The translations under genes were made by a program, and so were the position numbers. Shown here in pieces: positions 36,020-60,270 of a stretch of 64,000 bases of DNA (position 1 is its first letter; each line of letters begins with the position of its first letter). The DNA is taken from IMG/VR virus record IMGVR_UViG_3300046092_000062, positions 256,768 to 320,767 of that record. The stretch is one strand, 5' to 3'. The notes under the pieces are model-generated. The model was not told the DNA's origin. It worked only from the letters and a program-made list of their open reading frames with translations, and ran no database searches.

Positions 36020-36034
36020 GAAATTTTTCGTCTC

Positions 36035-37813: not shown

Positions 37814-38684
37814 AGGGACTGAGAAAACAGATCGTACCGGAACTGGCACTATTAGCCACTTTGGTATGCAGCAACGCTATAACCTAGCAGAATCATTTCC
37901 CGCAGTAACAACAAAGAAGCTAGCTTGGCGCAGCGTAGTATCTGAGTTACTGTGGTTTATTGAAGGATCAGGCGATGAAAGACGACTCGCTGAGATATTA
38001 CATGGAACTCGTGACCCTAGCAAGACAACTATCTGGTCCGGTAACGCTGGAGCTGATTATTGGACTCCTAAAGCAAAGTTCCCAGGAGACCTTGGCAGAG
38101 TATACGGAGTGCAATGGCGCAAATGGCGCACGCCAGTAGAGCACACACAAGAGACATTTAGAGATGACTTTGGCACTACATATAATAGACAGGGTAGTGT
38201 CCATTTCAAAGAAGTCGATCAACTTATGCAACTGATCGACGGTATTAAGCGAGATCCGCACGGACGAAGACATATTATATCAGCATGGAACCCAGGCGAG
38301 TTAGAAGCTATGGCCCTGCCACCGTGCCATATCTTAGCGCAGTTTTACGTATCAGATGGCAAACTAAGTTGCCAAATGTACCAACGAAGTTGTGATATGT
38401 TTTTAGGCGTACCGTTCAATGTCGCCAGCTATAGTTTGCTTACGCATCTGATAGCCAAAGTGTGCGATTTACAGGTCGGCGAGTTCGTTCACGTGCTAGG
38501 CGATGCACACATATACCTAAATCACGTAGAGCAGGTAAAAGAACAATTGAAGCGTGAACCCTTACCTGCGCCACAACTATGGATCAATCCGGATATTAAA
38601 GATATCACTAAGTTTACAATGGACGATATCAAGTTGATTGGTTACGAAAGCCATGCAGCAATTAAAGCGGAGATGGCAGTATGA
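37773..38684 (+). CDS. thyA: thymidylate synthase
   Basis: DRTGTGT, ELLWF, YGVQWR, ALPPCH, YQRSCDMFLGVPFN, DAHIYLNH. Confidence 0.96.
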   Translation: MNTYLAALQEVLNKGTEKTDRTGTGTISHFGMQQRYNLAESFPAVTTKKLAWRSVVSELLWFIEGSGDERRLAEILHGTRDPSKTTIWSGNAGADYWTPKAKFPGDLGRVYGVQWRKWRTPVEHTQETFRDDFGTTYNRQGSVHFKEVDQLMQLIDGIKRDPHGRRHIISAWNPGELEAMALPPCHILAQFYVSDGKLSCQMYQRSCDMFLGVPFNVASYSLLTHLIAKVCDLQVGEFVHVLGDAHIYLNHVEQVKEQLKREPLPAPQLWINPDIKDITKFTMDDIKLIGYESHAAIKAEMAV

Positions 38685-39649
38685 AATTTATCGTAACAGG
38701 TGGCGCAGGCTTTATTGGCCACAATGTAGTTAGACAGTTAGAAGCACAGGGACACGAATGTTTCGTGATTGACAGCGTAACTGACTATGGGTTTGTTAAC
38801 CGAGAAGAACTTGACTACTTGTACAAAAGCCGCAGAAGTCGGATGAAGGCAAGCGTTCATCACTTTGATCTGTGCGACAGAAAAGCAGTCGAAGATTTCT
38901 TTAGAACCTTTGCAGCCAAGTGCGATGCAGTTATTCACCTTGCTAGCTTTCCGAGACAAAAGGTTGTGGGATCTAACCCTGTATGGGGCAGCGAAGTGAT
39001 GGCCACTGCCCTAGTTAACTTACTAGAGATGACAAAGATTAACAAGATTCCCAAGTTTGTTTACATCAGCTCTAGCATGGTCTACGGTGACTTTAAGGAT
39101 GATGTTACTGAGTCGGCTATCTGCAATCCACAAGGCCAATACGGCATTATGAAATATATGGGAGAACACCTTGTTAAAGACTATACTCGTCGTGGCATTT
39201 TTGATCACGTTATTATACGCCCCTCTGCTGTTTATGGTGAATACGACGTGGAAGACAGAGTCGTTTCCAAGTTTATGCTCTCAGCTATGCGCGGAGAAAC
39301 TCTTAAGGTAAACGGCGCAAACGAAACGCTGGATTTTACATACGTAGAAGATGCTGCTGCCGGAATCGTTGCTGCTACCCTAAGCAAACAAGCTGTTAAC
39401 GGAACATATAACATTACCAAGAGTCATAGCTGTAGTCTACTTCAGGCTGCTAGCCTTGCTATTAAGATTGCAGGCAAAGGCAATGTAGAAGTTCGTGACA
39501 AGGATGCAGACTTCCCGTCACGTGGTGCATTGAATATTGATGCTGCCCGTAGAGACTTTGAATTTGATCCCAAAGTTGATGTTGAAGAAGGATTCCAGAA
39601 ATATCACGACTGGTTTAAATCGAGTCCATTTTGGAAATCAAGAATCTAA
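38681..39649 (+). CDS. NAD-dependent nucleotide-sugar epimerase/dehydratase
   Basis: TGGAGFIG, ISSSMVYG, YGIMK, DFTYVED. Confidence 0.9.
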   Translation: MKFIVTGGAGFIGHNVVRQLEAQGHECFVIDSVTDYGFVNREELDYLYKSRRSRMKASVHHFDLCDRKAVEDFFRTFAAKCDAVIHLASFPRQKVVGSNPVWGSEVMATALVNLLEMTKINKIPKFVYISSSMVYGDFKDDVTESAICNPQGQYGIMKYMGEHLVKDYTRRGIFDHVIIRPSAVYGEYDVEDRVVSKFMLSAMRGETLKVNGANETLDFTYVEDAAAGIVAATLSKQAVNGTYNITKSHSCSLLQAASLAIKIAGKGNVEVRDKDADFPSRGALNIDAARRDFEFDPKVDVEEGFQKYHDWFKSSPFWKSRI

Positions 39650-40740
39650 TACCGTTCTTTGGTATTGACCGTCAATACCTGACTATCCGCGACGAGTTGC
39701 TTAACGCAAGCGATGAGGTTTATAGGACTGGTCAGGTACTTGGTGGGCAACAAACATTCAATTTTGAATTGGCTATTGCTGAACGTTGCCAAAGGCGCTA
39801 CGCTGTTGCAGTTGGTTCATGCACACAAGGGCTAATCTTCTCTCTAATGGCAGGACCAAAAGCAGGGGAGAAAGTAATGATTCCCACTATCAGCTTTGCT
39901 GCCACAATCAACAGTGTGCTCCTAAGTGGGCACGAACCTGTATTCTGCGACACTGATTACAAAGCACTAATTGATCTCGAAAGCAGCGACTATGCACTCA
40001 AAGGTGCAGGAGTTGGTGCTATCATGTACGCCAACTTGTTTGGCAACACCATTGATTACGATCGCTTTAGAGTCATGACAGAGTTTTTCAATCACGATCT
40101 GTTTATCCTAGAGGATGCTGCACAGAGCTTTGGTGCAAGTTACAAAGGTATCCCCAGTGGCAAGCTAGGTACTGCAAGTGTGCTGAGTTTTGATCCCACT
40201 AAGAATCTTCCCAACTACGGGTCAGGCGGGATGATACTCACAGACGATTACGAGTTCTTCTGCAACATAGTAGACCTACGGGACAATGGCAAAACAAGTG
40301 GGCATCAAATTCCTGGAACCAACAGTAGAATGAGCGAAAGCGATTGCGCTCAGATGCTGGTTAAACTCAAGTACTTTGATGCGTGGCAAAAACGTAGAAC
40401 AGCCATTGCAGAGTACTACATTGAGAACCTTGTGTCTTACGTGGATGTGCTACTGCCCAACGAAGATGTTGTTCACGCATGGCACAAGTTTGTTATTCGC
40501 CTAAGTAACAGACACGCATTGATGCAGTATATGCGCGATGCAGGCATCGAAACAAAGATGCACTACGATAAACCACTGTTTGAATTGCCAGTAGGATACG
40601 AGTATACAGATTATATGAATGAGTTCTTTAGGGAATCAAGTGCATACACACGTGAATGTATGAGCTTGCCTATCTATCCCGAAATGACTGATGCCGAAGT
40701 CGAACACGTAGTTCGCACAATTAAGCAGTTCTTTAGTTAG
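39631..40740 (+). CDS. DegT/DnrJ/EryC1/StrS sugar aminotransferase
   Basis: LEDAAQSFGA, SFDPTKNLPNYGSGG, GTNSRM, SLPIYPEM. Confidence 0.92.
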   Translation: MEIKNLIPFFGIDRQYLTIRDELLNASDEVYRTGQVLGGQQTFNFELAIAERCQRRYAVAVGSCTQGLIFSLMAGPKAGEKVMIPTISFAATINSVLLSGHEPVFCDTDYKALIDLESSDYALKGAGVGAIMYANLFGNTIDYDRFRVMTEFFNHDLFILEDAAQSFGASYKGIPSGKLGTASVLSFDPTKNLPNYGSGGMILTDDYEFFCNIVDLRDNGKTSGHQIPGTNSRMSESDCAQMLVKLKYFDAWQKRRTAIAEYYIENLVSYVDVLLPNEDVVHAWHKFVIRLSNRHALMQYMRDAGIETKMHYDKPLFELPVGYEYTDYMNEFFRESSAYTRECMSLPIYPEMTDAEVEHVVRTIKQFFS

Positions 40741-41557
40741 CAGGAGCAGTTAATATAAACTGTTTATCGGTTTGTGTTAACTGCCACGTTGGTAATAAAC
40801 GTTTGGCCATTCTAGCATACAACGATTGACGTGACTGTTCGTCTGCTGTGAATGTGAGTGCTGTTACTTTACCTTGGTAACGCTGCAAGAATTCGCGCAT
40901 GATATCAGTAATAGTTGACATTACTTCTGCACTGTTGCCGGTGCCAGTTAGACCAAATTTACCGTAACGGGTGCGCCCACGTTCGGCATTTTTAAATTCC
41001 ACTTCCCATGTACCATTCGCCTCTGGATAAGTGTACGCATGGAATTGAAACGGGATCTCGCCAATGTGGAATACTGCTACTGCTTCTTCGCTGCCAGTAA
41101 AACTCCATTTGTAGTCTTTGCCGGGCTCAAATAATTCAGCAAGAGATTGGCCTGCTGCATCTTCGTAATAGCCTTTTTGGCCGTTTGGTAGGATGTGCTT
41201 GGACTGCTTGGATTGGTTCCAAGAACGCCACATTCTTTCGCCGGCATCAGTTTGGTCTGGATGCGGCATGACATCGTTGCCCAACATCTTAGCATACGCA
41301 TACATGGTAGTAGCAACGCCTTGATCTCGGTAATTTGGATTTACCCAAGTACTTTGGCTTTTTAATGTGTCGGGATCAAAGTAAAAATTAAACAAAATGT
41401 CGCCGATTAACTTTTTACCATCGTAGGCTTTAATTGCTAATCCAGCACCCTGGCTAGTCGCAGTATATGTATAGTCGCCGATTTGTTGTGTATGTTTAAA
41501 ACGACGATGGGCGATGTCTGGGTTAATAGCTTCTGTGATAATTTCATTGATTCGCAT
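40733..41557 (-). CDS. two-domain protein with GNAT-like N-terminal domain; possible virion-packaged protein
   Basis: MRINEIITE start; WVNPNYRDQGVATTMY (acetyl-CoA motif A); second domain begins SLAELFE. Confidence 0.65.
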   Translation of the reverse strand: MRINEIITEAINPDIAHRRFKHTQQIGDYTYTATSQGAGLAIKAYDGKKLIGDILFNFYFDPDTLKSQSTWVNPNYRDQGVATTMYAYAKMLGNDVMPHPDQTDAGERMWRSWNQSKQSKHILPNGQKGYYEDAAGQSLAELFEPGKDYKWSFTGSEEAVAVFHIGEIPFQFHAYTYPEANGTWEVEFKNAERGRTRYGKFGLTGTGNSAEVMSTITDIMREFLQRYQGKVTALTFTADEQSRQSLYARMAKRLLPTWQLTQTDKQFILTAPAN

Positions 41558-44005
41558 TCAGTATTTAGCATCGTAGCGGGCACGTAGCCACGCCCACTCA
41601 AAGCTCAACTGTAGCTTTGCTAAATCACCCTGCACTTCTTCGTAGTATGCAACTGCATCGTTAGCACCGTCTATGCTGTAATTGCTGTAATTGCCCGATG
41701 CAACCGTGCGCCATGTTTCAAGTCTATGCTCAGTTTCTAGTGTAGGCTGCGTATCCATAAACAATCGCAGCTTTAACACCTCTCTAAATGCTGTGCGCCA
41801 TGTGGTCCAAGCGTCTTGGTTATAGTGAGCTACCCCGCTTAAAATAGGCACCGATTCGTGCGGTTGTGACAGTGTAAAGTCAATTCCAGGATCGTTATTT
41901 GCTAAAACAAGGCTCTTATTGTAGGCAATCATTCCTTGGTGTCCGTACACTAGTCCATTGACGGGATTCTTTGCATTAAAGATGTAATGCTTGGGACCTT
42001 GCCAATAGTCTGGGCGGAACTCCCATATATCCCTGTTACCAAACACTTCTAGCTTGGCAAACACTGCTAGAAACCAATCTGTTGTGCTGGCCTGCGCTGC
42101 CGCTTGATATGCTGCTACACGCCCATTAACTCCACGGATCCATTTTACATCACGATTGCTCATGTACTCAGTATGCTCAAACCATTTCTGTTCGTCTGGT
42201 TCGCCATTGCTGATAAACACAATGTCCAAATCCTTTACTGCCTTCATATTACGCAATCGGGGATGCTCTACTAGATGCGGATAATCGTAAATTTGCGTTT
42301 TGAGATACTTCTTAATATCACGCGGAATCAAGCTGGTACTTTTGTCTGCACCAATGTCAATTGCAACGCGATCTTTTTCAGTCCACAGGCATGTGGTATA
42401 CCCGGTCATGCTAGTGAATTGTTTTTCCTTTGTAAACAAGGCATAGGGTGTAGTGAAGTTGTGATTCTTAATAGCGTTGATTAGATTGTCATGATCGTAG
42501 TGAACTGCTGGGACTGGGTAACGTGTTACTTCGTGCCCTTCTATATAGTTGATCACATTAAACCAATCCAACAACTCCAGTTCAACCATTTGCTTTTTAA
42601 ATGACTCAACGTGAATGTAGAATGTGTCGCCACGCTTCTCTGGTGAGAGTGTCCATCTAGATTCATTAGAGAAGCAATGAATCATCTCACGTTGCCACGG
42701 CTCAGGTTCCCACGTGAAGTCAAAGTCTCTGTAATCGCAAATGCTGTTGAGGATCCACACATACTCAGTGTCTGCGTTTTGCATGATACGCTTAAAGGTA
42801 TCAAAATATGTGTTTACAAAACGTGTCTTAACCATGTCCGGATATGTGTTTAACATTGCCGGGTAATCGATTTCGCTTTCCGGATTGCCGTGGTCCACAA
42901 AATACATGTCGCAGTTGGTGTCGGGCTTTACTACGCTTTGGTCAGACACAAAGTTTAAGCTAGGAAACTCTTCTATACCCTTTGCCCACTCTGTGTGTCG
43001 ATTGAATTCCCACTTGTTGATTAGGAATGTGTCACTCCATTTGTTATGCTGACTTGGAAACACATGAGTCATGTACTGTTGCCATGGTTCGGCGTGCCAG
43101 TGGAAGTCAAAATTAGAATAGTCATACTCGCTGCTAACTACCCAAAACTTATTGGTCTTGCTTCGTGTAACACATCGCTTGATTGTGTCCATCATGCTGT
43201 TAGCATAACGAACCTTAGTGACATTGTGTATTTCATTAAGTCTATCATACCGCACCTGTGCTGTAGGGTTGCCTTTATCAACAAAGAAAATGTCCAGCAC
43301 TTGCATTGCAGTTAATTTGTGATAGCCAGGTGTAGGCATAGGTCCTGCAAAGCTAATGTCTGTTGCTCCGGGTACGGTATAAGTTAAGCCAATGCTTTGT
43401 TGATAGTCACTGCCAAAATGATAAACATAAAGTGGATCAAGCGGATTAGGATGCCAACTAAAGTCTACTGTAGACTCGTTAATCTCTTCAGGGATCGCCC
43501 AATGCGTTTTGTCCGCTAATGCAGTAACCGTAAACGCATTACCGAACTTGATGCCAGTTGTATGCAACATGGTGTAGTAAACACCACTGGCACTCTGATG
43601 CTGACTAGGAAAGTGGTAAGTGTAGTTACCTTCTGTTGTATCCGGATGCCAAGTTAGATCCACCGAGGATGGGTCAATATAATCAGGTATCGTCCAGCCC
43701 GCAGGATAAGGCAATCGTTTAACTGATTGTTCAGTTCTAAAGTGATATTGTTTATGCGCATGGGTGTCTACGTGCGCAAGAAACACATCACCACATCGTT
43801 GATGCTGACTTGGCCACACATGCAAATGACTGTGTTCCCACGGCACAGGACGCCAATTAAAATCGAAGCCTGTGTAATCGTTGCCCCCATAAATATACCA
43901 GTAGTACCCAGTTTTACACTTGGCCGCTGCTGCTTCTATGCTCGGCGCATATTGCTCAAATGCAAATAGGTTTGGCTTGCGGCCATAATAAAATACGTCA
44001 AACAT
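41558..44005 (-). CDS. large protein of repeated glycosyltransferase-like modules
   Basis: four repeats starting D(V/I/M)xF/Y, each with T-x-x-x-W and FDF-x-W-x-x-x-PW-like motifs; C-terminal WRTAFREVLKL shared with 57085-57984. Confidence 0.7.
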   Translation of the reverse strand: MFDVFYYGRKPNLFAFEQYAPSIEAAAAKCKTGYYWYIYGGNDYTGFDFNWRPVPWEHSHLHVWPSQHQRCGDVFLAHVDTHAHKQYHFRTEQSVKRLPYPAGWTIPDYIDPSSVDLTWHPDTTEGNYTYHFPSQHQSASGVYYTMLHTTGIKFGNAFTVTALADKTHWAIPEEINESTVDFSWHPNPLDPLYVYHFGSDYQQSIGLTYTVPGATDISFAGPMPTPGYHKLTAMQVLDIFFVDKGNPTAQVRYDRLNEIHNVTKVRYANSMMDTIKRCVTRSKTNKFWVVSSEYDYSNFDFHWHAEPWQQYMTHVFPSQHNKWSDTFLINKWEFNRHTEWAKGIEEFPSLNFVSDQSVVKPDTNCDMYFVDHGNPESEIDYPAMLNTYPDMVKTRFVNTYFDTFKRIMQNADTEYVWILNSICDYRDFDFTWEPEPWQREMIHCFSNESRWTLSPEKRGDTFYIHVESFKKQMVELELLDWFNVINYIEGHEVTRYPVPAVHYDHDNLINAIKNHNFTTPYALFTKEKQFTSMTGYTTCLWTEKDRVAIDIGADKSTSLIPRDIKKYLKTQIYDYPHLVEHPRLRNMKAVKDLDIVFISNGEPDEQKWFEHTEYMSNRDVKWIRGVNGRVAAYQAAAQASTTDWFLAVFAKLEVFGNRDIWEFRPDYWQGPKHYIFNAKNPVNGLVYGHQGMIAYNKSLVLANNDPGIDFTLSQPHESVPILSGVAHYNQDAWTTWRTAFREVLKLRLFMDTQPTLETEHRLETWRTVASGNYSNYSIDGANDAVAYYEEVQGDLAKLQLSFEWAWLRARYDAKY
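41562..41568 (-). promoter_or_regulatory. late-type promoter
   Basis: CTAAATA 4 nt upstream of ATG 41557. Confidence 0.35.
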
Positions 44006-45122: not shown

Positions 45123-45541
45123 TGCTTCATGTACTTTGCAACTACTTCTGCTAGTTGCTTATGTGTATCATCAAACCAAGTGCTAACATGGTAATCGCAG
45201 TTGATGGGTTTTTCAAACAGTTTATTAGTGTCTTCAAATCTACCTTCATTGATAGTGTCCATCCACACTGTGAACTCAGCATCAAATTCTGCTCTTGCTG
45301 CTTCTGTGGGGCATACAAAATCTGCTACTGCAATCTTACCAGCTTTAACTACACCGTCGGCTAGATACTTCATACGCATTGCCTGCCTCATACGACCTTC
45401 TGGTGTAAAGTCCCAGTCATTGTATTCCTTGCGTACTGCATCTGCGTTAAGCCATACTCCGCCGATTAGATCTGCAAATGGTTTAGCCAATGTGCTCTTG
45501 CCACTTCCCGGCAATCCAAATATCAGTATCTTCTTAGTCAT
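45119..45541 (-). CDS. cysC: adenylylsulfate (APS) kinase-like protein
   Basis: GLPGSGKSTLA, LNADAVR, DFTPEGRMRQ, DFVCP, FEKP. Confidence 0.75.
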   Translation of the reverse strand: MTKKILIFGLPGSGKSTLAKPFADLIGGVWLNADAVRKEYNDWDFTPEGRMRQAMRMKYLADGVVKAGKIAVADFVCPTEAARAEFDAEFTVWMDTINEGRFEDTNKLFEKPINCDYHVSTWFDDTHKQLAEVVAKYMKH

Positions 45542-53800: not shown

Positions 53801-53834
53801 TATAGTGAATTATAGTGAATTATAGTTGATTATA
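53801..53834. repeat. 10-bp tandem repeat at gene junction
   Basis: TATAGTGAAT x2 + TATAGTTGAT + TATA. Confidence 0.7.
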
Positions 53835-55169
53835 CCAAGCTGCTAGCTCTGGGAATGTGTTGCAGAAGTCTTTGCCCCTGCGTTGATCGTACTGTGCAAA
53901 GAAGTTTTTAAAGTCCTGTTGTAACACTGATTGCTCTGCTGCGCCTGCATGTGGAGTTATCATCACATCAAGGTAATCAATTAGTCGTTTCAATTGATCA
54001 ATTTCAAATCCATGGCACACGTTGCTATCTTTGTGTGCTTGATAGAAGTTGCTGAGATTTGTTCTGTATTGGGTGCGTAGTTCGTCGGGTAATACCAACG
54101 GGCTTTGAAAACTTGGGAATCGTAAAATATTTAGCGAAAAGTTAATCGAGTCTTTACCATACTTACGCTTCCATGCCACTACCATCTCAAGGAAGCGGTC
54201 TAAGCTGCTAAGACATAGTGCGTTGACAGTACACATCACATGCAAACCACGGAACTTGCCGCTATCTAACAAACGCTCTACGTTGTTAGTCCAGTCCTCA
54301 AAGTTAATACCATCACGGATGTACTCAGACTGCAAGCCAATGGATTCGTTGCTGGTATACAAGTCAACTTCAACGCCATCAATGGCGCCAAGCAAGCGAT
54401 CGATATCTACTTCCGTGCCTAAGTTACTGTTAATAGCAAGGCGTGTCTTGCTCTTGCCTTTGTTGGTCTTAAACCATTCAATCAGCTTCCACGTTTCGCC
54501 CGACATCAATGGCTCTCCGCCGGTGATGCGTAGTTCCTTTAGTGTTCTGTGGAGATCGCTTTCCCACCACTTGTGAAAGGCGTCCACATAAGGATTAGCT
54601 TGACCGAAGCGATACAGTTGAGAGCTATCATGAGCATGAGTAAAGTGATTTCGTCCGTCACTAACCAATCCGTTATAGGCCCCGTTATTCCTAATGTCTT
54701 TAACCCAAGTGCTGCTAAAAGCAGGATTGCAGTAACTACATGCAAACTGACAAGTGCGGTCGAAAGCAATTTCCAAAGTTTGCAAATCCACATCGGTGCT
54801 GGCTGGGGTACTAAAAGCATAATTTAAATCCTTATCGTCATATATAACTGTTTTGTAAACACGGTCAGACACAGAGTCTTTACCCATGTCTTCAATCTTC
54901 CAGCAGTATTCACAACCTGCAGGACGTTCTCCCTTTTGCATCTGCTCACGTTCCATTTTCTTTTTAGAAGTGTTGTGCAGTGCTTTGGGGTTTGATGATA
55001 GCTCACTCACATCAATTGCATGTGGCAACGGATGATGGCAGCTAGTGGTTTGACCACTACCTAACCAGATAGTGGCGTTGTACCATTTTGCTCCGCAGAA
55101 GCTTTCGCTCTTAATGTCAATCACTCTGCGTTTGTATTCTAGGTCTGTTTCGTTATTGATTCTGGGCAT
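53820..55169 (-). CDS. radical SAM protein with N-terminal SPASM/twitch-like Cys domain
   Basis: CGAKW..SCHHP..CEYCW; CQFACSYC; TGGEPL. Confidence 0.9.
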   Translation of the reverse strand: MPRINNETDLEYKRRVIDIKSESFCGAKWYNATIWLGSGQTTSCHHPLPHAIDVSELSSNPKALHNTSKKKMEREQMQKGERPAGCEYCWKIEDMGKDSVSDRVYKTVIYDDKDLNYAFSTPASTDVDLQTLEIAFDRTCQFACSYCNPAFSSTWVKDIRNNGAYNGLVSDGRNHFTHAHDSSQLYRFGQANPYVDAFHKWWESDLHRTLKELRITGGEPLMSGETWKLIEWFKTNKGKSKTRLAINSNLGTEVDIDRLLGAIDGVEVDLYTSNESIGLQSEYIRDGINFEDWTNNVERLLDSGKFRGLHVMCTVNALCLSSLDRFLEMVVAWKRKYGKDSINFSLNILRFPSFQSPLVLPDELRTQYRTNLSNFYQAHKDSNVCHGFEIDQLKRLIDYLDVMITPHAGAAEQSVLQQDFKNFFAQYDQRRGKDFCNTFPELAAWYNQL

Positions 55170-56544
55170 GGTACCTACATTCGTCCCAGAACTCTTTCAT
55201 CTCTGGGAATGTTGTTTTAAAGTCTGTTCCGCGTCTTGCATCGTGATGATTAAAGAAGCGATAAAAGTCAGCACGTTGCAGTGTAACATATTCAGGATCA
55301 AGAGTGCTACCTTCTTTCATCCATTCTATGTCACGAGCCATACGTTGAATCTCGTAATCCTTAAAACCTTGAAATGGTTTGTCTGCTGTTTCTTTGTTAG
55401 CTTCCATCCATTTTAGAATGTCTTCCATACGCTTAACATAGACCCAAGGCATGATCTGAATACTTTGCCAGCTAGGGGTGCGTAGCAAGGGAGTGTCAAA
55501 CCAAACACGTTGATAAGTTGTGCTGTGCTGTTTTCGTAAATCCAGAATCCAATCTAGCTGCGCCTGTAAACCAACAATGCTTAAATTATTCATTGTGATA
55601 ATGAATGTGAGACTGTTGCGGTGAGGAATATCAGTTAGGTAACGCTGCACGTTGTTATGAACACGAGATGCTATCATGCCATGTCGAATGTACTCAGCCT
55701 GTTCCATATTGCCTGAGTCCAAACTAACATACTGCATAAAATGCTCAATTTGAGTATTGCACAAACGTTTTACATAATCAAGATACTGATCCATTAACTT
55801 AGGATCTACGCTGAAGTTACTGGTCACATTCAAATGTAGGTCTGGCTTGGGCATAGCCAGCACATAGTCAAACACCTTGTAAGTGTTCTTGTCCATCAGC
55901 GGCTCGCCACCTGTCATGCGGAAATGTTTAAGTTTAGAGTACAGTTCAGGCCACCACTCCCAAAACGCATCAACGTAGGGATTAGACTCTCTGGCAGGTA
56001 TTGGTCGTCTAGCATTAGTGAAGTGAGCCGGATCATTGTGAGGAACAGAGGTAGGAAAAGCACCGTGTCGTTGTACTTCATCAGCCCAACTGCTAGAAAA
56101 CTGAGGGGAACAATAACTACACTTAAGGTTACAAGCGTGGTTAAAATTAACTTCAACATAACTTGGAATTGTATCTTCTTGTCCTGTAGAATTTTTGATC
56201 TCGTCATAGTGTTCTGCTGCCCAAGGCTCTCCGCTTCTGTAATGTCTGTCACTTAGTTGATCATGTGCTTCAATGTTCCAGCAATAGCTACACTCACTGG
56301 GCTTTTCATCCTTTAGCATAATCACACGCTGTTGCTTTTTATGCTCGGTGTTATGTAATGCGCTGGGATTGAGTTTGATTGCTTCTGGATCAATCTTGTG
56401 CAATGGCGGATGGTAGCAACTGTTGTTCAATCCAGTTGGTAAGTGCAGGCTTACTTGTTTCCATTTAGCCAGACAGAGTGCAGGACCTAACTTGGCCTTC
56501 ATCTCATCTGCTGCACTCATAAAGTCGCTCTTACCTGTTGTCAT
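55153..56544 (-). CDS. radical SAM protein with N-terminal SPASM/twitch-like Cys domain
   Basis: CLAKW..SCYHP..CSYCW; CNLKCSYC; TGGEPL. Confidence 0.9.
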   Translation of the reverse strand: MTTGKSDFMSAADEMKAKLGPALCLAKWKQVSLHLPTGLNNSCYHPPLHKIDPEAIKLNPSALHNTEHKKQQRVIMLKDEKPSECSYCWNIEAHDQLSDRHYRSGEPWAAEHYDEIKNSTGQEDTIPSYVEVNFNHACNLKCSYCSPQFSSSWADEVQRHGAFPTSVPHNDPAHFTNARRPIPARESNPYVDAFWEWWPELYSKLKHFRMTGGEPLMDKNTYKVFDYVLAMPKPDLHLNVTSNFSVDPKLMDQYLDYVKRLCNTQIEHFMQYVSLDSGNMEQAEYIRHGMIASRVHNNVQRYLTDIPHRNSLTFIITMNNLSIVGLQAQLDWILDLRKQHSTTYQRVWFDTPLLRTPSWQSIQIMPWVYVKRMEDILKWMEANKETADKPFQGFKDYEIQRMARDIEWMKEGSTLDPEYVTLQRADFYRFFNHHDARRGTDFKTTFPEMKEFWDECRYHAQNQ

Positions 56545-57097
56545 ATGAAAATTTCTCTAACATGTTTTTAACTAATGTGTAATTGGTTACTATCTCTTGG
56601 GGAGGAATTGGGTATTGGTTCTGCTTAAACTTAGTTGTCTTGCGGGACTTGACCATATCTTCGTAATAGACAATTTCATTTGGCGTGATTGCAAAGTCTA
56701 AATATTGTTCCATTAGAAATTGCTCTATGTCGTCTTTAGTTGACTCCCACGGTAACAAGTCTTTGTAGTCATTCCAGTCCGGCGAATGTTTGCTTATGCT
56801 AGCCTGCGTCTGTGCTCTAAATACGCACCAACTTAGATACTGTGCTACTTTGTCTCTGCGGCGTAAATTAACCACATAGTAATCACTTGTCCAACTAAGG
56901 TCTACTGCTAGCGCAATCTTTGCCCAGTTTTGCACAATGCTGCAATACACAAACTTGTCGGCTATATCAGGCAGTTCAGTAACTTCACCTAGTATAACTT
57001 TTTCAGGCAACTGCGACTCGTTATAAAGCATGTCGCAGGTCATGTGACTGCCACTACGAGCAGTGCCAATGACTATCATGCCTTTTATTCTCTGCAC
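56531..57097 (-). CDS. Stf0-like sulfotransferase
   Basis: IGTARSGSHM, LRRRDKVAQYLS, YYED. Confidence 0.65.
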   Translation of the reverse strand: MQRIKGMIVIGTARSGSHMTCDMLYNESQLPEKVILGEVTELPDIADKFVYCSIVQNWAKIALAVDLSWTSDYYVVNLRRRDKVAQYLSWCVFRAQTQASISKHSPDWNDYKDLLPWESTKDDIEQFLMEQYLDFAITPNEIVYYEDMVKSRKTTKFKQNQYPIPPQEIVTNYTLVKNMLEKFSYDNR

Positions 57098-57984
57098 ATG
57101 ATTCCCTTGTTCTTAAACTGACTATTATAGTGATGTTTGAAAAATTTACTTTGGTATTCGTCCAAGTCAATAATAGGTAAGTCCAAGCATCTTGTTAATT
57201 CAACGCTGTATAAGTTTACAAAGTCAATAACCTCAAACTTGTGTACAGTGTTATCCCAATAGTCTTTTAACTTTTGGAAGTCTTGGACTTCTGTGTAGTC
57301 CCAGTCTGAGAGCATGGTGTTGTAAGTGCCTTGGCGGGCGCCTGCCATTGCCCACAGTCCATTTTCCACATCTGATCCCACGTTGTGCCAGATAGATAAG
57401 TTGTCAAGGTTTCTCCTAACAACGCTATTTTTGAAATCAGATAAACTTGGTTTACGTCCACGGTCCAAACACATTTTAACGCCTTCCCTAAATCCTGCAC
57501 GCCAAGCCTGGAACGCAGTGGCATTCGGATACGTGGTACTGTAGCAGTCCGCCATAGCCCAGTATTGAGGATGGAAACAGAATTCGACTTGTGTCTCATG
57601 ACTACCATCAGTGGCTTCGTGTGTGCGCATAGATTCGATAAAGCTCCTAGTCCAGCACGAAATCCCACCATTGCCATATTGTAACCCATTTATAATATTC
57701 CTCGCTCTCCATCTAAATACACAATCACGATTAGTATCATCAATACTAAGTTGCTGGTTAAAGAAAGCAGGATCGGGGAGGTTGTCTCCGTCAATAAGAA
57801 TGAAGCGGTCCGTGTCACTAGCTCTTGCCGCTGCTTTGTGTGCAGCATCGCTCCCGCTAACGCCATCCACCCGCTTGGCCCAAGGAACGACATTCTGTAT
57901 CTGAATCCAGAACTCTTCTTTTTTAGGTTCATCATATGTAAGGAAGATGCAGTCCAGGTCTGCAACGTCAATTATTTCTGTCAT
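57085..57984 (-). CDS. GT-A-like glycosyltransferase
   Basis: DCIFLTYDEP, AAHKAAARAS, FILIDGDN (DxD). Confidence 0.7.
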   Translation of the reverse strand: MTEIIDVADLDCIFLTYDEPKKEEFWIQIQNVVPWAKRVDGVSGSDAAHKAAARASDTDRFILIDGDNLPDPAFFNQQLSIDDTNRDCVFRWRARNIINGLQYGNGGISCWTRSFIESMRTHEATDGSHETQVEFCFHPQYWAMADCYSTTYPNATAFQAWRAGFREGVKMCLDRGRKPSLSDFKNSVVRRNLDNLSIWHNVGSDVENGLWAMAGARQGTYNTMLSDWDYTEVQDFQKLKDYWDNTVHKFEVIDFVNLYSVELTRCLDLPIIDLDEYQSKFFKHHYNSQFKNKGIMCRE

Positions 57985-58318
57985 AGTATTCGATGTTTGT
58001 GTACTCTTCGTCTTGTTCTATTAGCAGTGCAGGATGGTTCTTAACCACTGCGTATCCACTTGTTGATTTACGTAACTGCAACCACATTGTGCCAGCATCG
58101 ATTGTGATTAACTGCCCATTTACAACTTTTAGGTTATGCACTGTTGCTCTATTGTATACTGATTTTGGTATAGTGATATAATTAGTACCCTTGCTATCAC
58201 CCATGCCCATGTACAGGGCATTACCATGCGCATCGTAGTATAAACGATATTCAATGGTTTGCACAACCTCTGGTTCAATCAAACCAAATGCTTTAATTAA
58301 CTCCGGCAGCTCGTTCAT
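57968..58318 (-). CDS. hypothetical protein
   Basis: in operon; YRLYYD. Confidence 0.65.
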   Translation of the reverse strand: MNELPELIKAFGLIEPEVVQTIEYRLYYDAHGNALYMGMGDSKGTNYITIPKSVYNRATVHNLKVVNGQLITIDAGTMWLQLRKSTSGYAVVKNHPALLIEQDEEYTNIEYYDRNN

Positions 58319-59135
58319 AATCTCTAATTATCTCATCCGTAATAAAGTCTTTGTAATGGTAGTGGACCGGAAATAGTTGCAGCACATTATTGATTCTAAT
58401 ATCAGGTGCATCTATTACTACGTTAACCGCCCTATGGAATTCAGTATCCGAAGGCCATCCATTAATACCGGGCTTCATGTGTACAAAACTTGTTCCAACA
58501 CCAGGTAGAGTAGTTAACTCTCTACCAACAATGTTAGCGGCCACTGCATATACAAAATCTGTAGTGGCTTGAGTAGTTGCTGTTCGCTTAAACTCTGAGC
58601 CGACCTGTTCCCACGTAAGGAACAGTTCTCTTGCTACTTTAAAGAATTCTAATGCTGTTTTACTGTAACGAAAATACATTAGTCCGTTATATACATCGGG
58701 CAACTCATTGTCTACAAACGATGCCCGATAAGGACTTGGCACTTGATCGCCGTGATAGTTTCTGCATCCTAGTCCTAATACTACATCTCGCATACGGTAC
58801 AAATCCCACCGCTGTGTCATGTCCCGTGTAACTAAGATATCTGCTTCCAACTTGATTGTTTCTTTAAAAGGAGTAAGCCAAAATACTTGCCATTCGTTTG
58901 CTAACTTCCAATCAGTGCCAGTTGAATAATCATGTGTTAATTCAATTACATAATCAAACACCTTGCGATGTTGTTCTGTTACTTGTGCCATGGTAGCTGC
59001 GTCCACAATAACTGCGTACCTGGCACCCGGTGTTACTGCCTTAATACTCAATGCTTGCACGTAGGCCATTCGCAGATAATCTGCTTTGCCGTTTTGTGCA
59101 ATAGTTAAAAATCCCTGTTGTTCTTTATGCTGCAC
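58293..59135 (-). CDS. GT8-like glycosyltransferase
   Basis: YLRMAYVQALSIK, TPFKETIKLEAD, YNGLMYF, FVHMK; GTG 59135 chosen over 59168. Confidence 0.65.
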   Translation of the reverse strand: MQHKEQQGFLTIAQNGKADYLRMAYVQALSIKAVTPGARYAVIVDAATMAQVTEQHRKVFDYVIELTHDYSTGTDWKLANEWQVFWLTPFKETIKLEADILVTRDMTQRWDLYRMRDVVLGLGCRNYHGDQVPSPYRASFVDNELPDVYNGLMYFRYSKTALEFFKVARELFLTWEQVGSEFKRTATTQATTDFVYAVAANIVGRELTTLPGVGTSFVHMKPGINGWPSDTEFHRAVNVVIDAPDIRINNVLQLFPVHYHYKDFITDEIIRDYERAAGVN

Positions 59136-59952
59136 AGTGCTGGTCCACGAATGTTTTAAAGTTGTCACTAAGTAAATATCCTTTACTCAGGACATGTAAA
59201 TTGCCCACTGGAATAACATAGCCTTCCTTAGTATCCTTAACGTGCAGTAAAGATCCAACCCTTGCAATACTTTGTAACTGTCCAGTGGCAGTTAATAGGG
59301 GCTGTGGTAACTGCGTTTGTTTATCAGTCTGGTAACCGTTAACCAAATAATCTGCAATTGCAAACGCATAATCGTTGCGATAATTAGTTGCAGGGATATT
59401 GTATAACATCTTATAGTAATCGTAATTGCGCTGTACTCGTCCTACTAAATCAAATAGCATTTCTGCCTTGGCTGTTTTGCGAAACAAGATCACTGTGGCC
59501 CAGATAAATGGCAGGCTGTACATGCCCATAGTATCTGTAAATTCGTCTTGACCTAGATTGATATTACGATGTGGAATTAGGTAGTCCCATTCTGTATCAA
59601 AGTAAGTTAATAGACTGTTATCTAACACAAGATAGTCGGTGTCCATAAGAATAGTTTCATCGTATGGACTAAGCTCGTAGGCCATATAACGACCAAAGTT
59701 TCGCCACTGTACACGTTGACCTAACTCTGTGCTGTAACGTGTGTTGCCACCTTGTGATTCAATGCGTACTATGTTGTCTACATCAAACTCAACTACTTCA
59801 TCTAAGCCCGTTACTAAGGTAACCGGCAAGTTGAGGTTATGCTTAATCAAGCGAATGGTGTTACTAGTTAGCTTAACGTAATCAGTGTCTGCATTGTTAA
59901 ATGCAAACAATAACACGCCCTTAGATTTTTCTAATCTTTTTAAGTTCTGCAT
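59125..59952 (-). CDS. GT8-like glycosyltransferase
   Basis: SPYDETILMDTD (DxD), WATVILF, YRNDYAF. Confidence 0.7.
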   Translation of the reverse strand: MQNLKRLEKSKGVLLFAFNNADTDYVKLTSNTIRLIKHNLNLPVTLVTGLDEVVEFDVDNIVRIESQGGNTRYSTELGQRVQWRNFGRYMAYELSPYDETILMDTDYLVLDNSLLTYFDTEWDYLIPHRNINLGQDEFTDTMGMYSLPFIWATVILFRKTAKAEMLFDLVGRVQRNYDYYKMLYNIPATNYRNDYAFAIADYLVNGYQTDKQTQLPQPLLTATGQLQSIARVGSLLHVKDTKEGYVIPVGNLHVLSKGYLLSDNFKTFVDQHCAA

Positions 59953-60235
59953 GTTGTTGGTGCCATTCATTCATAACTCGACTGTAATGTTGTTGTGCCT
60001 GCACTAAGAATACCTGTCGGTCCACTTGAATTGGATTCTCGTAGACATCTTCGATATAGAGTTCGTCAACTGGCCATTCCTTTACAAAGGAGATCAAGCC
60101 CGGAGTGATTTTAAATAAACCGCCATTGTGTGCAAAATGCAAATCGGTTTGGATGCGCTCTCTTAGTAGGCGCTTGTTCTTTTGATAGTCAGTGGCCAAT
60201 CGAATTTGTTCCACAATCGTAGGTATGTTACTCAT
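59921..60235 (-). CDS. hypothetical protein
   Basis: first gene after promoter 60242-60270. Confidence 0.7.
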   Translation of the reverse strand: MSNIPTIVEQIRLATDYQKNKRLLRERIQTDLHFAHNGGLFKITPGLISFVKEWPVDELYIEDVYENPIQVDRQVFLVQAQQHYSRVMNEWHQQHAELKKIRKI

Positions 60236-60241
60236 AACACA

Positions 60242-60270
60242 ATTATACACAAAGGAGAATGGACAGTCAA
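60242..60270 (-). promoter_or_regulatory. sigma70-type promoter driving the tailoring cluster (probably leaderless)
   Basis: TTGACT-17 bp-TATAAT on minus strand; ATG 6 nt downstream. Confidence 0.7.

What the first reader, a model, noticed from the sequence alone, without database searches (positions are those of the whole stretch)
38681..60270. ~21-kb tailoring cluster downstream of tail genes: candidate virion or host-surface decoration pathway
Seen: nucleotide-sugar dehydratase + aminotransferase, at least five glycosyltransferase-like genes, carbamoyltransferase, APS kinase, nucleotidyltransferase, sulfotransferase, two SGNH proteins and five radical SAM enzymes. Most form one overlapping minus-strand run with its own promoter, next to Ser/Thr-rich tail proteins. 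No flippase, polymerase or other export gene is visible. Inference: cytoplasmic assembly of a complex carbamoylated/sulfated glycan on virion proteins (or DNA), rather than host O-antigen conversion.
Basis: partly seen in the sequence, partly recalled or inferred. Interest (0 to 1): 0.7.

Follow-up and report, generated by a model that had tools for sequence, protein, structure and literature searches.

The report
Jumbo-phage sugar-tailoring operon with five radical-SAM enzymes
A freshwater jumbo phage carries a conserved block of about 22 genes that looks built to make and decorate a sugar chain inside the infected cell without any export machinery; what it decorates (probably the phage's own fibres) is still unproven.

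Summary
The cluster is real. The window is the last 64 kb of a 320,767-bp freshwater jumbo-phage genome. From 60,250 down to 45,119, seventeen minus-strand genes mostly overlap. A hairpin and a near-consensus sigma-70-type promoter separate them from two fibre genes. Firm calls are five N-terminal-twitch radical-SAM paralogues (NF033640), a NodU/CmcH carbamoyltransferase, a DegT aminotransferase and an SDR. Calls at Pfam level only are the APS-kinase-like and nucleotidyltransferase-like genes.

The "glycosyltransferases" pass no Pfam threshold. Four have only remote support: a GT-A/nucleotide-sugar-transferase fold for P299 and the P815 C-terminus, and a GT8-like signal for P291 and P281. The fifth (P372) is unverified. 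The sulfotransferase and SGNH labels rest on motifs alone.

The gene order recurs in about 100 uncultured viral contigs; 36 hold all 13 core genes.

A Crocinitomicaceae chromosome has the same toolkit beside a membrane anchor and an ABC-transporter ATPase, which the phage lacks. The phage genome has no Wzx, Wzy, GtrA, initiating phosphoglycosyltransferase, second thymidylate-synthase homologue, TET or C5-methylase. A cytoplasmic glycan pathway is therefore supported and DNA modification disfavoured.

A virion-protein target is plausible but untested, and remodelling of host-envelope glycan remains a live rival.

The parts
38681..39649 (+). SDR: NAD-dependent nucleotide-sugar epimerase/dehydratase family protein. 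Its active-site motifs are GalE-like.
   Evidence: PF01370 at 146 bits. Best NCBIfam hit is dTDP-glucose dehydratase at 121 bits against a cut-off of 365. Motifs SSSMVYG and YGIMK resemble the in-window GalE. Found in 31 related loci.
39631..40740 (+). DegT/PseC/ArnB-type PLP sugar aminotransferase. It overlaps the SDR gene by 19 nt.
   Evidence: PF01041 at 257 bits. PseC 169 bits and ArnB 143 bits, both below the equivalog cut-offs.
40733..41557 (-). Weak GNAT-like protein, an accessory gene.
   Evidence: Acetyltransf_1 at 22.8 bits against a cut-off of 20.7. Present in only 3 related loci.
41558..44005 (-). P815: five N-terminal repeat modules ending in a D-F/L-x-W-x-P motif, plus a C-terminal domain homologous to P299 that lacks the DGD motif.
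   Evidence: No Pfam, PHROG or NCBIfam hit. hhalign to the P299 family gives 98% probability over residues 589-758. Repeat motifs at residues 48, 116, 181, 300 and 429. Found in 90 loci.
44004..45122 (+). P372: conserved phage-only protein of unknown function, on the opposite strand and wedged between minus-strand genes. The glycosyltransferase label is unverified.
   Evidence: No family hit, even across 22 members at E<=1. The Atlas lead to GT10 scores only 0.80. Three paralogues lie elsewhere in the genome.
45119..45541 (-). APS-kinase-like P-loop small-molecule kinase (140 aa).
   Evidence: PF01583 at 33.3 bits against a cut-off of 21.1; AAA_33 at 31.8. TIGR00455 at 26 bits against 138.7. 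In some relatives the matching ORFs are 262-284 aa, which suggests fusion with the nucleotidyltransferase.
45538..45909 (-). Small HxGH nucleotidyltransferase (123 aa), nearest to the NMNAT type.
   Evidence: CTP_transf_like at 21.4 bits against a cut-off of 21. NMN adenylyltransferase model at 37 bits against 127. Motifs GRWQPWHAGH and ISATKIR.
46094..47581 (-). NodU/CmcH-family O-carbamoyltransferase.
   Evidence: Carbam_trans_C at 160 bits and Carbam_trans_N at 119 bits. 46% identical to a Ralstonia phage RsoM2USA protein. Found in 82 loci.
47547..48092 (-). SGNHa: SGNH-like protein with an N-terminal GDSFTYG motif.
   Evidence: Motif seen in the sequence. DUF6071 at 23 bits against a cut-off of 27. 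36% identical to SGNHb over the first ~90 residues.
48114..48938 (-). SGNHb: SGNH-like protein with an N-terminal AGDSFVYG motif.
48916..50019 (-). P367: conserved unknown protein. The confident model shows a cyclophilin-like barrel with a helical insert.
   Evidence: AlphaFold2 model with pLDDT 89 and pTM 0.87. No Foldseek match in the PDB. VIA-align gives Z 7-8 to many cyclophilins, which is within the noise range. Found in 81 loci.
50001..51296 (-). rS1: N-terminal-twitch radical-SAM enzyme.
   Evidence: NF033640 at 286 bits against a cut-off of 170. CxxxCxxC motif and four N-terminal Cys residues.
51289..52497 (-). rS2: N-terminal-twitch radical-SAM enzyme.
   Evidence: NF033640 at 336 bits; conserved Cys motifs.
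52484..53800 (-). rS3: N-terminal-twitch radical-SAM enzyme.
   Evidence: NF033640 at 412 bits. The profile weakly matches the BtrN twitch domain and the viperin core.
53820..55169 (-). rS4: N-terminal-twitch radical-SAM enzyme.
   Evidence: NF033640 at 296 bits. 51% identical to RsoM2USA_202.
55153..56544 (-). rS5: N-terminal-twitch radical-SAM enzyme.
   Evidence: NF033640 at 301 bits. 31% identical to rS4.
56531..57097 (-). P188: sulfotransferase-like by motif only; an accessory gene.
   Evidence: GTARSGS and RRRDKVAQYLS align with the two motifs of a bacterial Sulfotransfer_3 protein. No HMM or PDB hit. Present in only 3 loci.
57085..57984 (-). P299: nucleotide-diphospho-sugar-transferase (GT-A-type) fold with an invariant D65-G66-D67. 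It is among the most conserved non-rSAM genes (median 67% identity).
   Evidence: Alignment A1 invariant columns. AlphaFold2 model with pLDDT 78. Top Foldseek hit is PBCV-1 A64R at E 2.9e-3, probability 0.98, followed by other GT-A enzymes. AFDB hits are GT2-like. VIA-align gives Z 6.6-7.9 to GT-A enzymes and to sugar nucleotidyltransferases. Pfam GT2 reaches only 12.9 bits.
57968..58318 (-). P116: small conserved protein of unknown function.
   Evidence: No family hit. Found in 55 loci.
58293..59168 (-). P291: GT8-like candidate transferase.
   Evidence: The profile hits glycogenin-1 at E 0.007. Homologous to P281 by hhalign at 98.5% probability. phrog_1903, function unknown.
59125..59970 (-). 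P281: paralogue of P291 with a D-x-D-Y motif (MDTDYLVLD).
59921..60250 (-). P109: first gene of the operon, a small conserved protein of unknown function. The real start is probably the ATG at 60235.
   Evidence: Homologues are 104 aa long. Intergenic sequence read directly. No family hit.
60242..60270 (-). Sigma-70-type promoter of the operon: TTGACT, 17-nt spacer, TATAAT.
   Evidence: 11 of 12 consensus positions. The same promoter class occurs 36 times in the genome against about 2 expected. It is conserved at this position in 22 of 42 related loci under a strict pattern.
60271..60298 (-). Terminator-like hairpin directly after the fibA stop codon.
   Evidence: 12-bp stem, dG -14.1 kcal/mol, z -4.7, followed by a U-rich tail. 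Hairpins are seen at the same place in many relatives.
60300..61295 (-). fibA: Ser/Thr/Gly/Asn-rich fibre-like protein. It is a neighbour and a candidate acceptor, not part of the operon.
   Evidence: Sequence composition. Syntenic in 54 loci. RNA word depth 57-70 against about 10 for the operon.
61310..62848 (-). fibB: tail-fibre protein whose C-terminal module is shared with two other fibre proteins in the genome. A late-like GATAAATA motif lies 20 nt upstream.
   Evidence: PHROG hits to tail fibre and virion structural protein families. Paralogous C-termini. Promoter motif.

Best explanation
This is a conserved phage-encoded pathway that builds and decorates a carbohydrate in the cytoplasm.

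Shown:
- An operon of seventeen mostly overlapping genes with its own host-type promoter. Next to it are a divergent pair (P815, P372) and a convergent SDR-aminotransferase pair.
- The genes encode an amino-sugar branch (SDR + DegT) and four remote GT-A/GT8-like transferase candidates.
- They also encode an O-carbamoyltransferase, two SGNH-like proteins and a nucleotidyltransferase plus APS-kinase-like pair.
- There are five anciently diverged radical-SAM enzymes, each with an N-terminal auxiliary-cluster (twitch) domain.
- The phage has no lipid-carrier initiation, flippase, polymerase or exporter gene.

Inferred:
- Activated sugars taken from the host pool are converted (an amino sugar among them), transferred stepwise onto an acceptor and O-carbamoylated. 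In some relatives they may also be N-acetylated or sulfated.
- They are further altered by up to five radical-SAM steps acting on sugar or nucleotide-sugar substrates.
- The acceptor is most likely a phage-made surface protein of the virion, such as the Ser/Thr-rich fibres encoded next door. This would resemble the way chloroviruses, mimiviruses and mycobacteriophages glycosylate their own particles.
For: Remote transferase evidence:
- P299 has a GT-A fold, with the PBCV-1 capsid glycosyltransferase A64R as top PDB hit and an invariant DGD.
- The P815 C-terminus is homologous to P299.
- P291 and P281 are homologous and weakly match glycogenin.

Coherence of the unit:
- The same gene order occurs in about 100 IMG/VR contigs. 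36 hold all 13 core genes, down to about 50% protein identity.
- GC content equals the genome's, 0.43 against 0.44.

The same toolkit sits in a bacterial surface-glycan locus on a Crocinitomicaceae chromosome. That locus holds three N_Twi_rSAM genes, a NodU carbamoyltransferase, an SDR, a Sulfotransfer_3 protein, GDSL proteins and a GT1/GT4 domain. It also has a UbiA-type membrane domain and an ABC ATPase, which the phage lacks.

Cytoplasmic and exporter-less:
- TM scan.
- No Bac_transf, WecA-type, Wzx, Wzy or GtrA gene in the genome.

The radical-SAM profile is nearest to BtrN (twitch domain) and viperin (core). Both act on small carbohydrate or nucleotide substrates.

The multi-transferase set is conserved across a diverse phage clade together with fibA and fibB. 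That fits a phage-encoded acceptor better than fast-evolving host glycans (inference).

Precedent: virion glycoproteins were detected in the jumbo myovirus XacN1 (PMC5852040).

The operon region is represented in a lake metatranscriptome.
Against: - No direct evidence for any acceptor.
- The operon is insulated from the fibre genes by a hairpin. It uses a sigma-70-type promoter, while fibB has a late-like GATAAATA motif.
- Its RNA word depth is 5-10 times lower than that of the fibres. Co-regulation with the virion genes is therefore not seen.
- None of the 'glycosyltransferases' reaches a curated family threshold.
- The structural Z-scores for P299 (below 8) also fit sugar nucleotidyltransferases.
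- Synteny with the fibre genes may simply reflect conserved genome order within one clade.
- The bacterial counterpart decorates an exported, probably lipid-linked glycan.
Confidence: 0.45

Rival explanations
1. Host-envelope remodelling. The soluble phage enzymes act on the host's own lipid-linked or nucleotide-sugar intermediates at the inner face of the membrane. The host's flippase or ABC transporter and ligase then export the altered glycan. This changes the cell surface, for example to block superinfection or to stop progeny sticking to debris.
For: - The closest cellular counterpart is a bacterial surface-glycan locus with a membrane anchor and an ABC ATPase.
- The operon has a host-sigma-70-type promoter of the class that clusters in the small-gene, early-like region of the genome.
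- It is expressed separately from, and at lower depth than, the fibre genes.
- Carbamoyltransferases of this family sit in many cyanophage and pelagiphage genomes.
Against: - The 92%-complete genome has no initiating transferase, Wzx, Wzy, GtrA or polytopic membrane protein.
- A set of four or five transferases is conserved across a diverse phage clade. That is hard to square with host glycans, which differ between hosts (inference).
- About 6% of a lytic genome is a large investment for surface conversion.
Confidence: 0.25
2. A soluble product. The cluster makes a free small molecule, or a modified peptide matured by the twitch-domain radical-SAM enzymes. Candidates include a modified nucleotide-sugar or an aminoglycoside- or nucleoside-like compound. 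The product would act on the host or on competitors.
For: - Carbamoyltransferase, DegT, SDR, kinase, nucleotidyltransferase and radical-SAM enzymes are the standard parts of aminoglycoside and nucleoside antibiotic pathways (established knowledge; TobZ is cited in PMC8670742).
- The twitch domain is nearest to BtrN of butirosin synthesis.
- Small conserved unknown proteins (P109, P116) and a cyclophilin-like P367 could bind or carry a substrate.
Against: - No exporter or self-resistance gene is evident.
- P109 and P116 are conserved, apparently folded proteins rather than leader-core peptides. This is a reading of the sequence, not a test.
- Several transferase-like proteins imply an oligomeric product.
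- The bacterial counterpart is a surface-glycan locus, not a natural-product locus.
Confidence: 0.15
3. DNA hypermodification. The carbamoyltransferase and transferases decorate hydroxymethylated bases in phage DNA, as in 5-carbamoyloxymethylcytosine or glycosylated 5hmC.
For: - A phage NodU/CmcH-family carbamoyltransferase was shown to carbamoylate 5hmC in DNA and in 5hmdCTP, and it co-occurs with thymidylate-synthase homologues (PMC8670742).
- A thymidylate-synthase gene lies 7.4 kb from the carbamoyltransferase.
Against: - That thymidylate synthase has PCH and GVPFN, with Asn at position 177. This marks unmodified contigs in that study.
- It is the only family member in the genome.
- There is no TET/JBP and no C5-methyltransferase.
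- In that study, carbamoyltransferases on unmodified contigs were flanked by genes such as group-1 glycosyltransferases.
- A separate FolE and QueE-like pair could account for any DNA modification.
Confidence: 0.05

Closest known systems
Virus-encoded virion glycosylation machinery (chlorovirus PBCV-1 A64R and partners; mimivirus fibril glycosylation; mycobacteriophage capsid and tail-tube glycosylation)
   Same: - The virus encodes its own nucleotide-sugar-modifying enzymes and soluble GT-A-type transferases.
- They act in the cytoplasm without the host's membrane-bound glycan export route.
- P299's best PDB match is A64R.
- Glycoproteins have been reported in the jumbo phage XacN1.
   Different: - No glycan on any virion protein has been shown here.
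- The transferases are too diverged to be placed in any CAZy or Pfam family.
- None of those systems is known to me to include a tandem radical-SAM array, a carbamoyltransferase or SGNH proteins (from memory, not tested).
Bacterial surface-glycan locus with N_Twi_rSAM genes (Crocinitomicaceae chromosome OZ252050.1, locus L135; similar loci L154, L156, L163, L173)
   Same: It holds three N-terminal-twitch radical-SAM genes, a NodU-type carbamoyltransferase, an SDR, a sulfotransferase, GDSL/SGNH proteins and a glycosyltransferase in one locus.
   Different: - The bacterial locus adds a UbiA-type membrane domain fused to the GT, a UDP-glucose dehydrogenase, a PhyH dioxygenase and an ABC ATPase. 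These point to a lipid-linked, exported glycan.
- The phage has none of these. It has its own phage-only proteins instead (P815, P372, P367, P299, P291, P281).
- This bacterial locus is itself uncharacterised.
Phage 5-hydroxymethylcytosine carbamoyltransferase system (Yang et al., eLife 2021, PMC8670742)
   Same: Same carbamoyltransferase family (PF02543 + PF16861), in a phage, with a thymidylate-synthase homologue on the same contig.
   Different: - The thymidylate synthase here is the canonical Asn177 type.
- No second homologue, TET or C5-methylase exists in the genome.
- The neighbours are sugar enzymes rather than dCMP deaminase or MazG-like genes.
Tandem N_Twi_rSAM arrays in cultured phages (Vibrio phage KVP40 group such as K566; Ralstonia phage RsoM2USA)
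   Same: - K566 has four N-twitch radical-SAM genes clustered within about 7 kb.
- RsoM2USA has an rS4 orthologue (51% identity) close to a carbamoyltransferase orthologue (46%) and an SGNH-like gene.
   Different: These are smaller sets without the transferase-like genes, and all are annotated as hypothetical. No function has been reported.
Temperate-phage O-antigen conversion (GtrABC, Oac, Wzy-beta)
   Same: A phage-borne set of genes that alters a sugar polymer.
   Different: Those systems consist of integral membrane proteins acting on lipid-linked or periplasmic O-antigen. None is present here.

Membership tests
NF033640 N_Twi_rSAM (twitch domain-containing radical SAM protein) | Whole-protein score above the curated cut-off of 170 bits | tested here: met
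   All five score 286-412 bits. The genome has eight members over the cut-off.
NF033640 N_Twi_rSAM (twitch domain-containing radical SAM protein) | CxxxCxxC radical-SAM cluster motif, plus N-terminal Cys residues for an auxiliary Fe-S cluster | tested here: met
   C156, C160 and C163 are invariant, as are C42, C61, C102 and C105, in the seven-sequence alignment. The GGEP motif is also invariant.
NodU/CmcH O-carbamoyltransferase (PF02543 + PF16861) | Both Pfam domains above the gathering score | tested here: met
   119 and 160 bits. The NodU equivalog model is not met, at 140 bits against 1000.
Phage 5hmC-DNA carbamoyltransferase system | A co-encoded thymidylate-synthase homologue with Asp at E. 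coli position 177 (dCMP-specific), or another route to 5hmC | tested here: not met
   Asn in the GVPFN motif. Only one thymidylate-synthase gene. No TET/JBP. No C5-methyltransferase.
DegT/DnrJ/EryC1 sugar aminotransferase | Pfam PF01041 above the gathering score over the full length | tested here: met
   257 bits over residues 19-364. No equivalog is reached, so substrate specificity is unknown.
   TIGR01181 scores 121 bits against 365. The motif SSSMVYG resembles the in-window GalE's SSSASVYG. The expected dehydratase motif (TDE) is recalled from memory. Only membership of the SDR epimerase/dehydratase superfamily is established.
GT-A glycosyltransferases (GT2-like), for P299 and the P815 C-terminus | Match to a curated GT family model | tested here: not met
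   PF00535 reaches 12.9-13.5 bits against a cut-off of 23.3.
GT-A glycosyltransferases (GT2-like), for P299 and the P815 C-terminus | Nucleotide-diphospho-sugar-transferase fold with a DxD-type motif | tested here: inconclusive
   - Foldseek hits are dominated by GT-A enzymes, with lesser hits to sugar nucleotidyltransferases. The top hit is A64R at E 2.9e-3 and probability 0.98, with TM 0.25-0.37.
- AFDB hits are GT2-like.
- VIA-align gives Z 6.6-7.9, shared with sugar nucleotidyltransferases.
- D65-G66-D67 is invariant in P299 but absent from P815.
GT8 (glycogenin/LgtC-like), for P291 and P281 | Match to PF01501 or to solved GT8 sequences | tested here: inconclusive
   PF01501 has no match in the genome at E<=0.1. 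The P291 family profile hits glycogenin-1 at E 0.007 over the N-terminal 110 residues. The P281 profile hits nothing. The two families are homologous to each other.
GT10 fucosyltransferase-like, for P372 | Any sequence or structure match to GT10 | tested here: not met
   The only lead is a language-model cosine of 0.80, which is chance level. No Pfam hit in any of 22 members at E<=1. No PDB profile hit.
Adenylyl-sulfate (APS) kinase | Pfam PF01583 above the gathering score, and the NCBIfam equivalog | tested here: inconclusive
   PF01583 at 33.3 bits against 21.1 is met. TIGR00455 at 26 bits against 138.7 is not met. AAA_33 scores nearly the same. The substrate is unknown.
Sulfotransferase, for P188 | Match to a sulfotransferase model; 5'-PSB and 3'-PB PAPS-binding motifs | tested here: inconclusive
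   No Pfam, NCBIfam or PDB match. Both motif-like stretches align with a bacterial Sulfotransfer_3 protein from the cognate locus.
SGNH/GDSL hydrolase, for 47547-48092 and 48114-48938 | Match to GDSL models; catalytic blocks I, II, III and V | tested here: inconclusive
   Only block I (GDS) is evident. DUF6071 is sub-threshold. There is no Lipase_GDSL hit.
O-antigen conversion or Wzx/Wzy-dependent glycan export | Presence of Wzx, Wzy, GtrA or an initiating phosphoglycosyltransferase | tested here: not met
   PF01943, PF04932, PF04138, PF02397 and PF00953 all have no match in the genome. No polytopic membrane protein exists apart from Bax1-I. The genome is 92% complete, so a gene in the missing 8% cannot be excluded.
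Virus-encoded virion glycosylation | A glycan covalently attached to virion proteins | not testable with these tools
   This needs glycoproteomics or glycan staining of purified particles.

The most novel reading that the evidence does not exclude
An abundant clade of freshwater jumbo phages uses a fixed set of five (up to seven) N-terminal-twitch radical-SAM enzymes as glycan-tailoring catalysts. These would perform radical chemistry not yet described for any glycoconjugate, such as C-C or C-O cross-links, epimerisation or deoxygenation on a sugar chain. The result would be a carbamoylated, hypermodified glycan coat on the phage's own fibres. The same enzyme family would do the equivalent job in uncharacterised bacterial surface-glycan loci.
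Probability: 0.3. Interest if true: 0.85.

Novelty: new variant of a known kind. Interest (0 to 1): 0.65.

Why it matters
- The N-terminal-twitch radical-SAM family (NF033640) has no characterised member that I could find.
- It also appears in tandem arrays in cultured Vibrio and Ralstonia phages and in bacterial glycan loci.
- This window gives a compact, conserved, transcribed context that ties the family to carbohydrate tailoring. It names concrete partner enzymes for biochemical reconstitution.
- If the product decorates virions, it would extend self-glycosylation from giant eukaryotic viruses and actinophages to jumbo phages, whose nearest cultured relatives infect Gram-negative hosts. 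That bears on adsorption, defence evasion and phage stability in lakes.
- If the product instead rewrites the host surface, it would be an exporter-less mode of surface conversion by a lytic phage.

Tried and rejected
- Megablast of 12 kb against 50,697 phage records: no match.
- Pfam, PHROGs and NCBIfam gave nothing for P815, P372, P367, P299, P116, P281 and P109, and only function-unknown PHROG hits for P291.
- Family-profile searches against PDB sequences gave nothing for P299, P372, P367 and P281.
- The ESM Atlas returned only phage-only unnamed clusters for P299 and P372, and nothing for P367.
- P367: Foldseek found no fold. VIA-align gave cyclophilin-like matches at Z about 8, which is within the noise range, so I treat this only as a lead.
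- hhalign found no relation between P299 and P291, or between P372 and P367.
- The five-paralogue alignment was too diverged for a genome scan. Relatives cannot be drawn for a virus record.
- Exact-protein look-ups for two bacterial homologues were not on record.
- The T4-type late promoter TATAAATA is real in this genome but does not precede the operon.
- Reichenbachiella and Synechococcus single-copy N_Twi_rSAM contexts were uninformative or only loosely sugar-related.
- Literature searches:
  - No paper on N-terminal-twitch rSAM function turned up.
  - The 'moraphage' paper concerns another lineage.
  - The RsoM2USA paper does not mention these genes.
- I did not run complex prediction because I make no protein-binding claim.
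- I considered the kinase plus nucleotidyltransferase pair as a NadR-like NAD-salvage pair. The HxGH motif is NMNAT-like, and a second NMNAT-motif protein exists at C1:249158-250447. This could not be settled.

Full report
**Setting.** The window is the last 64 kb of a single-contig IMG/VR virus record of 320,767 bp, estimated 92% complete.
- Its T4-type DNA polymerase is 52% identical to that of Sinorhizobium phage Phosso, 48% to Agrobacterium phage Atu_ph07 and about 42% to Rak2-like jumbo phages. It is therefore a jumbo phage whose nearest cultured relatives are jumbo myoviruses.
- No near-identical cultured phage exists.
- The DNA is found in many freshwater and lake metagenomes.

**Anatomy.** ORF listing and translation give the following layout.
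- On the plus strand: SDR (38681-39649) overlapping DegT (39631-40740).
- Converging on them from the minus strand: a weak GNAT (40733-41557) and the 815-aa P815 (41558-44005).
- P372 (44004-45122, plus strand) starts back-to-back with P815 and ends tail-to-tail with the kinase.
- From 60250 down to 45119 runs a chain of seventeen minus-strand genes: P109, P281, P291, P116, P299, P188, rS5, rS4, rS3, rS2, rS1, P367, SGNHb, SGNHa, carbamoyltransferase, nucleotidyltransferase and kinase.
- Thirteen of the sixteen junctions in that chain overlap by 4-50 nt. The three gaps are 19, 21 and 184 nt.
- Upstream on the same strand lie fibA (60300-61295), fibB (61310-62848) and a Gly-rich protein (62906-63988).
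- The plus-strand neighbours to the left are DHFR, thymidylate synthase, Bax1-I, a DUF2201/VWA protein and a MoxR-like ATPase. The 'tail genes' of the finding are therefore the minus-strand fibre genes, not these left-hand neighbours.
- If the record is circularly permuted, the large fibre genes at the start of the contig (C1:4751-20600) lie on the other side.

**What the genes are.**
- Strong calls:
  - Five radical-SAM enzymes, all members of NF033640 with an N-terminal twitch domain (286-412 bits against a cut-off of 170).
  - They are only 20-31% identical to each other but keep the CxxxCxxC motif and four N-terminal cysteines.
  - A NodU/CmcH carbamoyltransferase, a DegT aminotransferase and an SDR.
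- Pfam-level calls: an APS-kinase-like P-loop kinase and a small HxGH nucleotidyltransferase.
- The SDR's motifs look like the phage's own GalE rather than a 4,6-dehydratase.
- The transferases needed remote methods:
  - The P299 family (mean column identity 70%, invariant DGD) folds into a nucleotide-diphospho-sugar-transferase domain.
  - Its Foldseek hits are dominated by GT-A enzymes, led by the PBCV-1 capsid glycosyltransferase A64R. The Z-scores stay below 8 and are shared with sugar nucleotidyltransferases.
  - The C-terminus of P815 is homologous to P299 but lacks the DGD motif. Its N-terminus holds five repeat modules.
  - P291 and P281 are homologous to each other, and P291 weakly matches glycogenin.
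  - P372 remains unassigned.
- P367 gives a confident model with no convincing structural relative.
- P188 has two sulfotransferase-like motifs only.
- The SGNH label rests on the GDS motif.

**Conservation.**
- Two scans of IMG/VR returned 102 loci. tblastn shows the module in nearly all of them, in the same order. 36 loci hold all 13 core genes.
- P188 and the GNAT occur only in the three nearest relatives, so sulfation and acetylation, if real, are accessories.
- Some relatives carry six or seven radical-SAM genes and extra P372-like fragments beside them.
- The cluster's GC content equals that of the genome.
- The protein database holds at least 7,988 homologues of the radical-SAM family at E<=1e-10. 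Many of the best hits lie on contigs of 100-360 kb.
- Cultured phages have pieces of the module:
  - RsoM2USA has an rS4 orthologue near a carbamoyltransferase orthologue.
  - Vibrio phages of the KVP40 group have clustered N-twitch radical-SAM genes.
  - All of these genes are unannotated.

**Transcription.**
- Directly after the fibA stop codon there is a 12-bp hairpin (dG -14.1, z -4.7). It abuts TTGACT-17-TATAAT, and the probable ATG of P109 follows six bases later.
- This promoter class occurs 36 times in the genome against about 2 expected. It is concentrated in a region of small genes.
- A promoter and/or hairpin is seen at the same junction in most relatives.
- TATAAATA, the T4 late motif, occurs nine times, seven of them just upstream of genes. 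fibB has GATAAATA 20 nt upstream.
- In a lake metatranscriptome, contigs of an 85-95% identical relative cover the operon at word depth 6-12 and the fibre genes at 57-100. A DNA run shows the opposite trend. The break falls between 60120 and 60304.
- Depths from assembled contigs are crude. They do agree with the sequence signals that the operon and the fibre genes are separate units. That sigma-70-type promoters are early in T4-like phages is established knowledge; that the same holds here is inference.

**Where the product goes.**
- Export. A hydrophobicity scan found no protein with more than four predicted TM segments apart from the 7-TM Bax1-I, and none with two or more in the cluster. 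Family scans found no Wzx, Wzy, GtrA, Bac_transf or WecA-type gene. No canonical GT2 or GT8 was found either.
- DNA. The known phage DNA carbamoyltransferase needs 5hmC (PMC8670742). The only thymidylate-synthase homologue here has Asn177, and TET and C5-methylase are absent.
- Bacterial counterpart. A genome scan found N_Twi_rSAM genes in many bacteria.
  - In a Crocinitomicaceae chromosome, three of them sit with a NodU carbamoyltransferase, an SDR, UDP-glucose dehydrogenase, a sulfotransferase, GDSL proteins, a UbiA+GT1/GT4+GDSL fusion, PhyH and an ABC ATPase.
  - The enzyme mix is therefore a recurring glycan-tailoring toolkit. The phage version lacks the membrane anchor and the exporter.
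- Radical-SAM substrates. The profile's nearest solved relatives are BtrN (twitch domain) and viperin (core). Both act on small carbohydrate or nucleotide substrates. These are weak hits.

**Judgement.**
- I am fairly sure (about 0.8) that this is a carbohydrate-building and tailoring pathway that works in the cytoplasm.
- The acceptor is open.
  - A phage-made virion protein is the most economical reading. A multi-transferase set conserved together with its neighbouring fibre genes across a diverse clade suggests a conserved, phage-encoded acceptor. Self-glycosylation also has precedents, including glycoproteins in the jumbo phage XacN1.
  - Separate regulation from the fibres and the bacterial surface-glycan counterpart keep host-envelope remodelling alive.
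  - A soluble product is possible. DNA modification is unlikely.
- The five radical-SAM steps are the novel part. Nothing here tells what they do.

Noticed in passing
window 13216-13917 (+) and 19685-20557 (+): A GTP cyclohydrolase I (FolE, 139 bits) and a QueE-like radical-SAM protein (69 bits, below cut-off). Together they hint at a 7-deazaguanine (preQ0-type) pathway, possibly for DNA modification, separate from the cluster.
   Followed up: no
window 9417-13214 (+): A second sugar mini-cluster: a GT1-like protein (25 bits against a cut-off of 26.4), a bona fide GalE (288 bits against 262) and a short DegT-like ORF.
   Followed up: partly
G000:C1:64967-66139(+), 111110-112018(-), 181272-182168(+): Three more N_Twi_rSAM genes above the cut-off lie outside the cluster, making eight in the genome, plus three weaker radical-SAM matches. 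Three further P372 paralogues lie at C1:160333-161454, 167074-168165 and 121651-122775.
   Followed up: partly
whole genome; for example C1:54155-76924: Two promoter classes. A sigma-70-like TTGAC[AT]-N16-18-TA[TC]A[AC]T occurs 36 times (about 2 expected) and clusters in a small-gene region. A T4-late-like TATAAATA occurs 9 times, 7 of them directly upstream of genes.
   Followed up: partly
window 31900-38684 (+): A MoxR-like ATPase, a DUF2201 metallopeptidase/VWA protein, a 7-TM Bax1-I homologue, DHFR and thymidylate synthase lie in a row. A Bax-inhibitor homologue is unusual in a phage.
   Followed up: no
window 62906-63988 (-): The Gly360 protein has long poly-Gly and Gly-Asp repeats at both ends around a central domain, with a weak PHROG hit to a major head protein family. 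It is transcribed at about 30x word depth in the RNA run.
   Followed up: no
L113-L118: Phage contigs carrying this cluster in full or in part are binned into bacterial MAGs labelled Legionellales, Polynucleobacter, Flavobacterium, Porticoccaceae and Haliscomenobacter. This is either mis-binning or a hint at hosts.
   Followed up: no
window 43990-44020 and 45119-45122: P372 is on the opposite strand with no intergenic space. Its start codon overlaps that of P815 head-to-head, and its stop overlaps the kinase gene tail-to-tail. Its promoter must therefore lie inside a neighbour's coding sequence. The arrangement is conserved in relatives.
   Followed up: no
L112 (Vibrio phage K566, record 161548-174447): The N-twitch radical-SAM array of this KVP40-like phage lies a few kb from a PagP-like lipid A acyltransferase gene and a nicotinamide phosphoribosyltransferase gene.
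   Followed up: no
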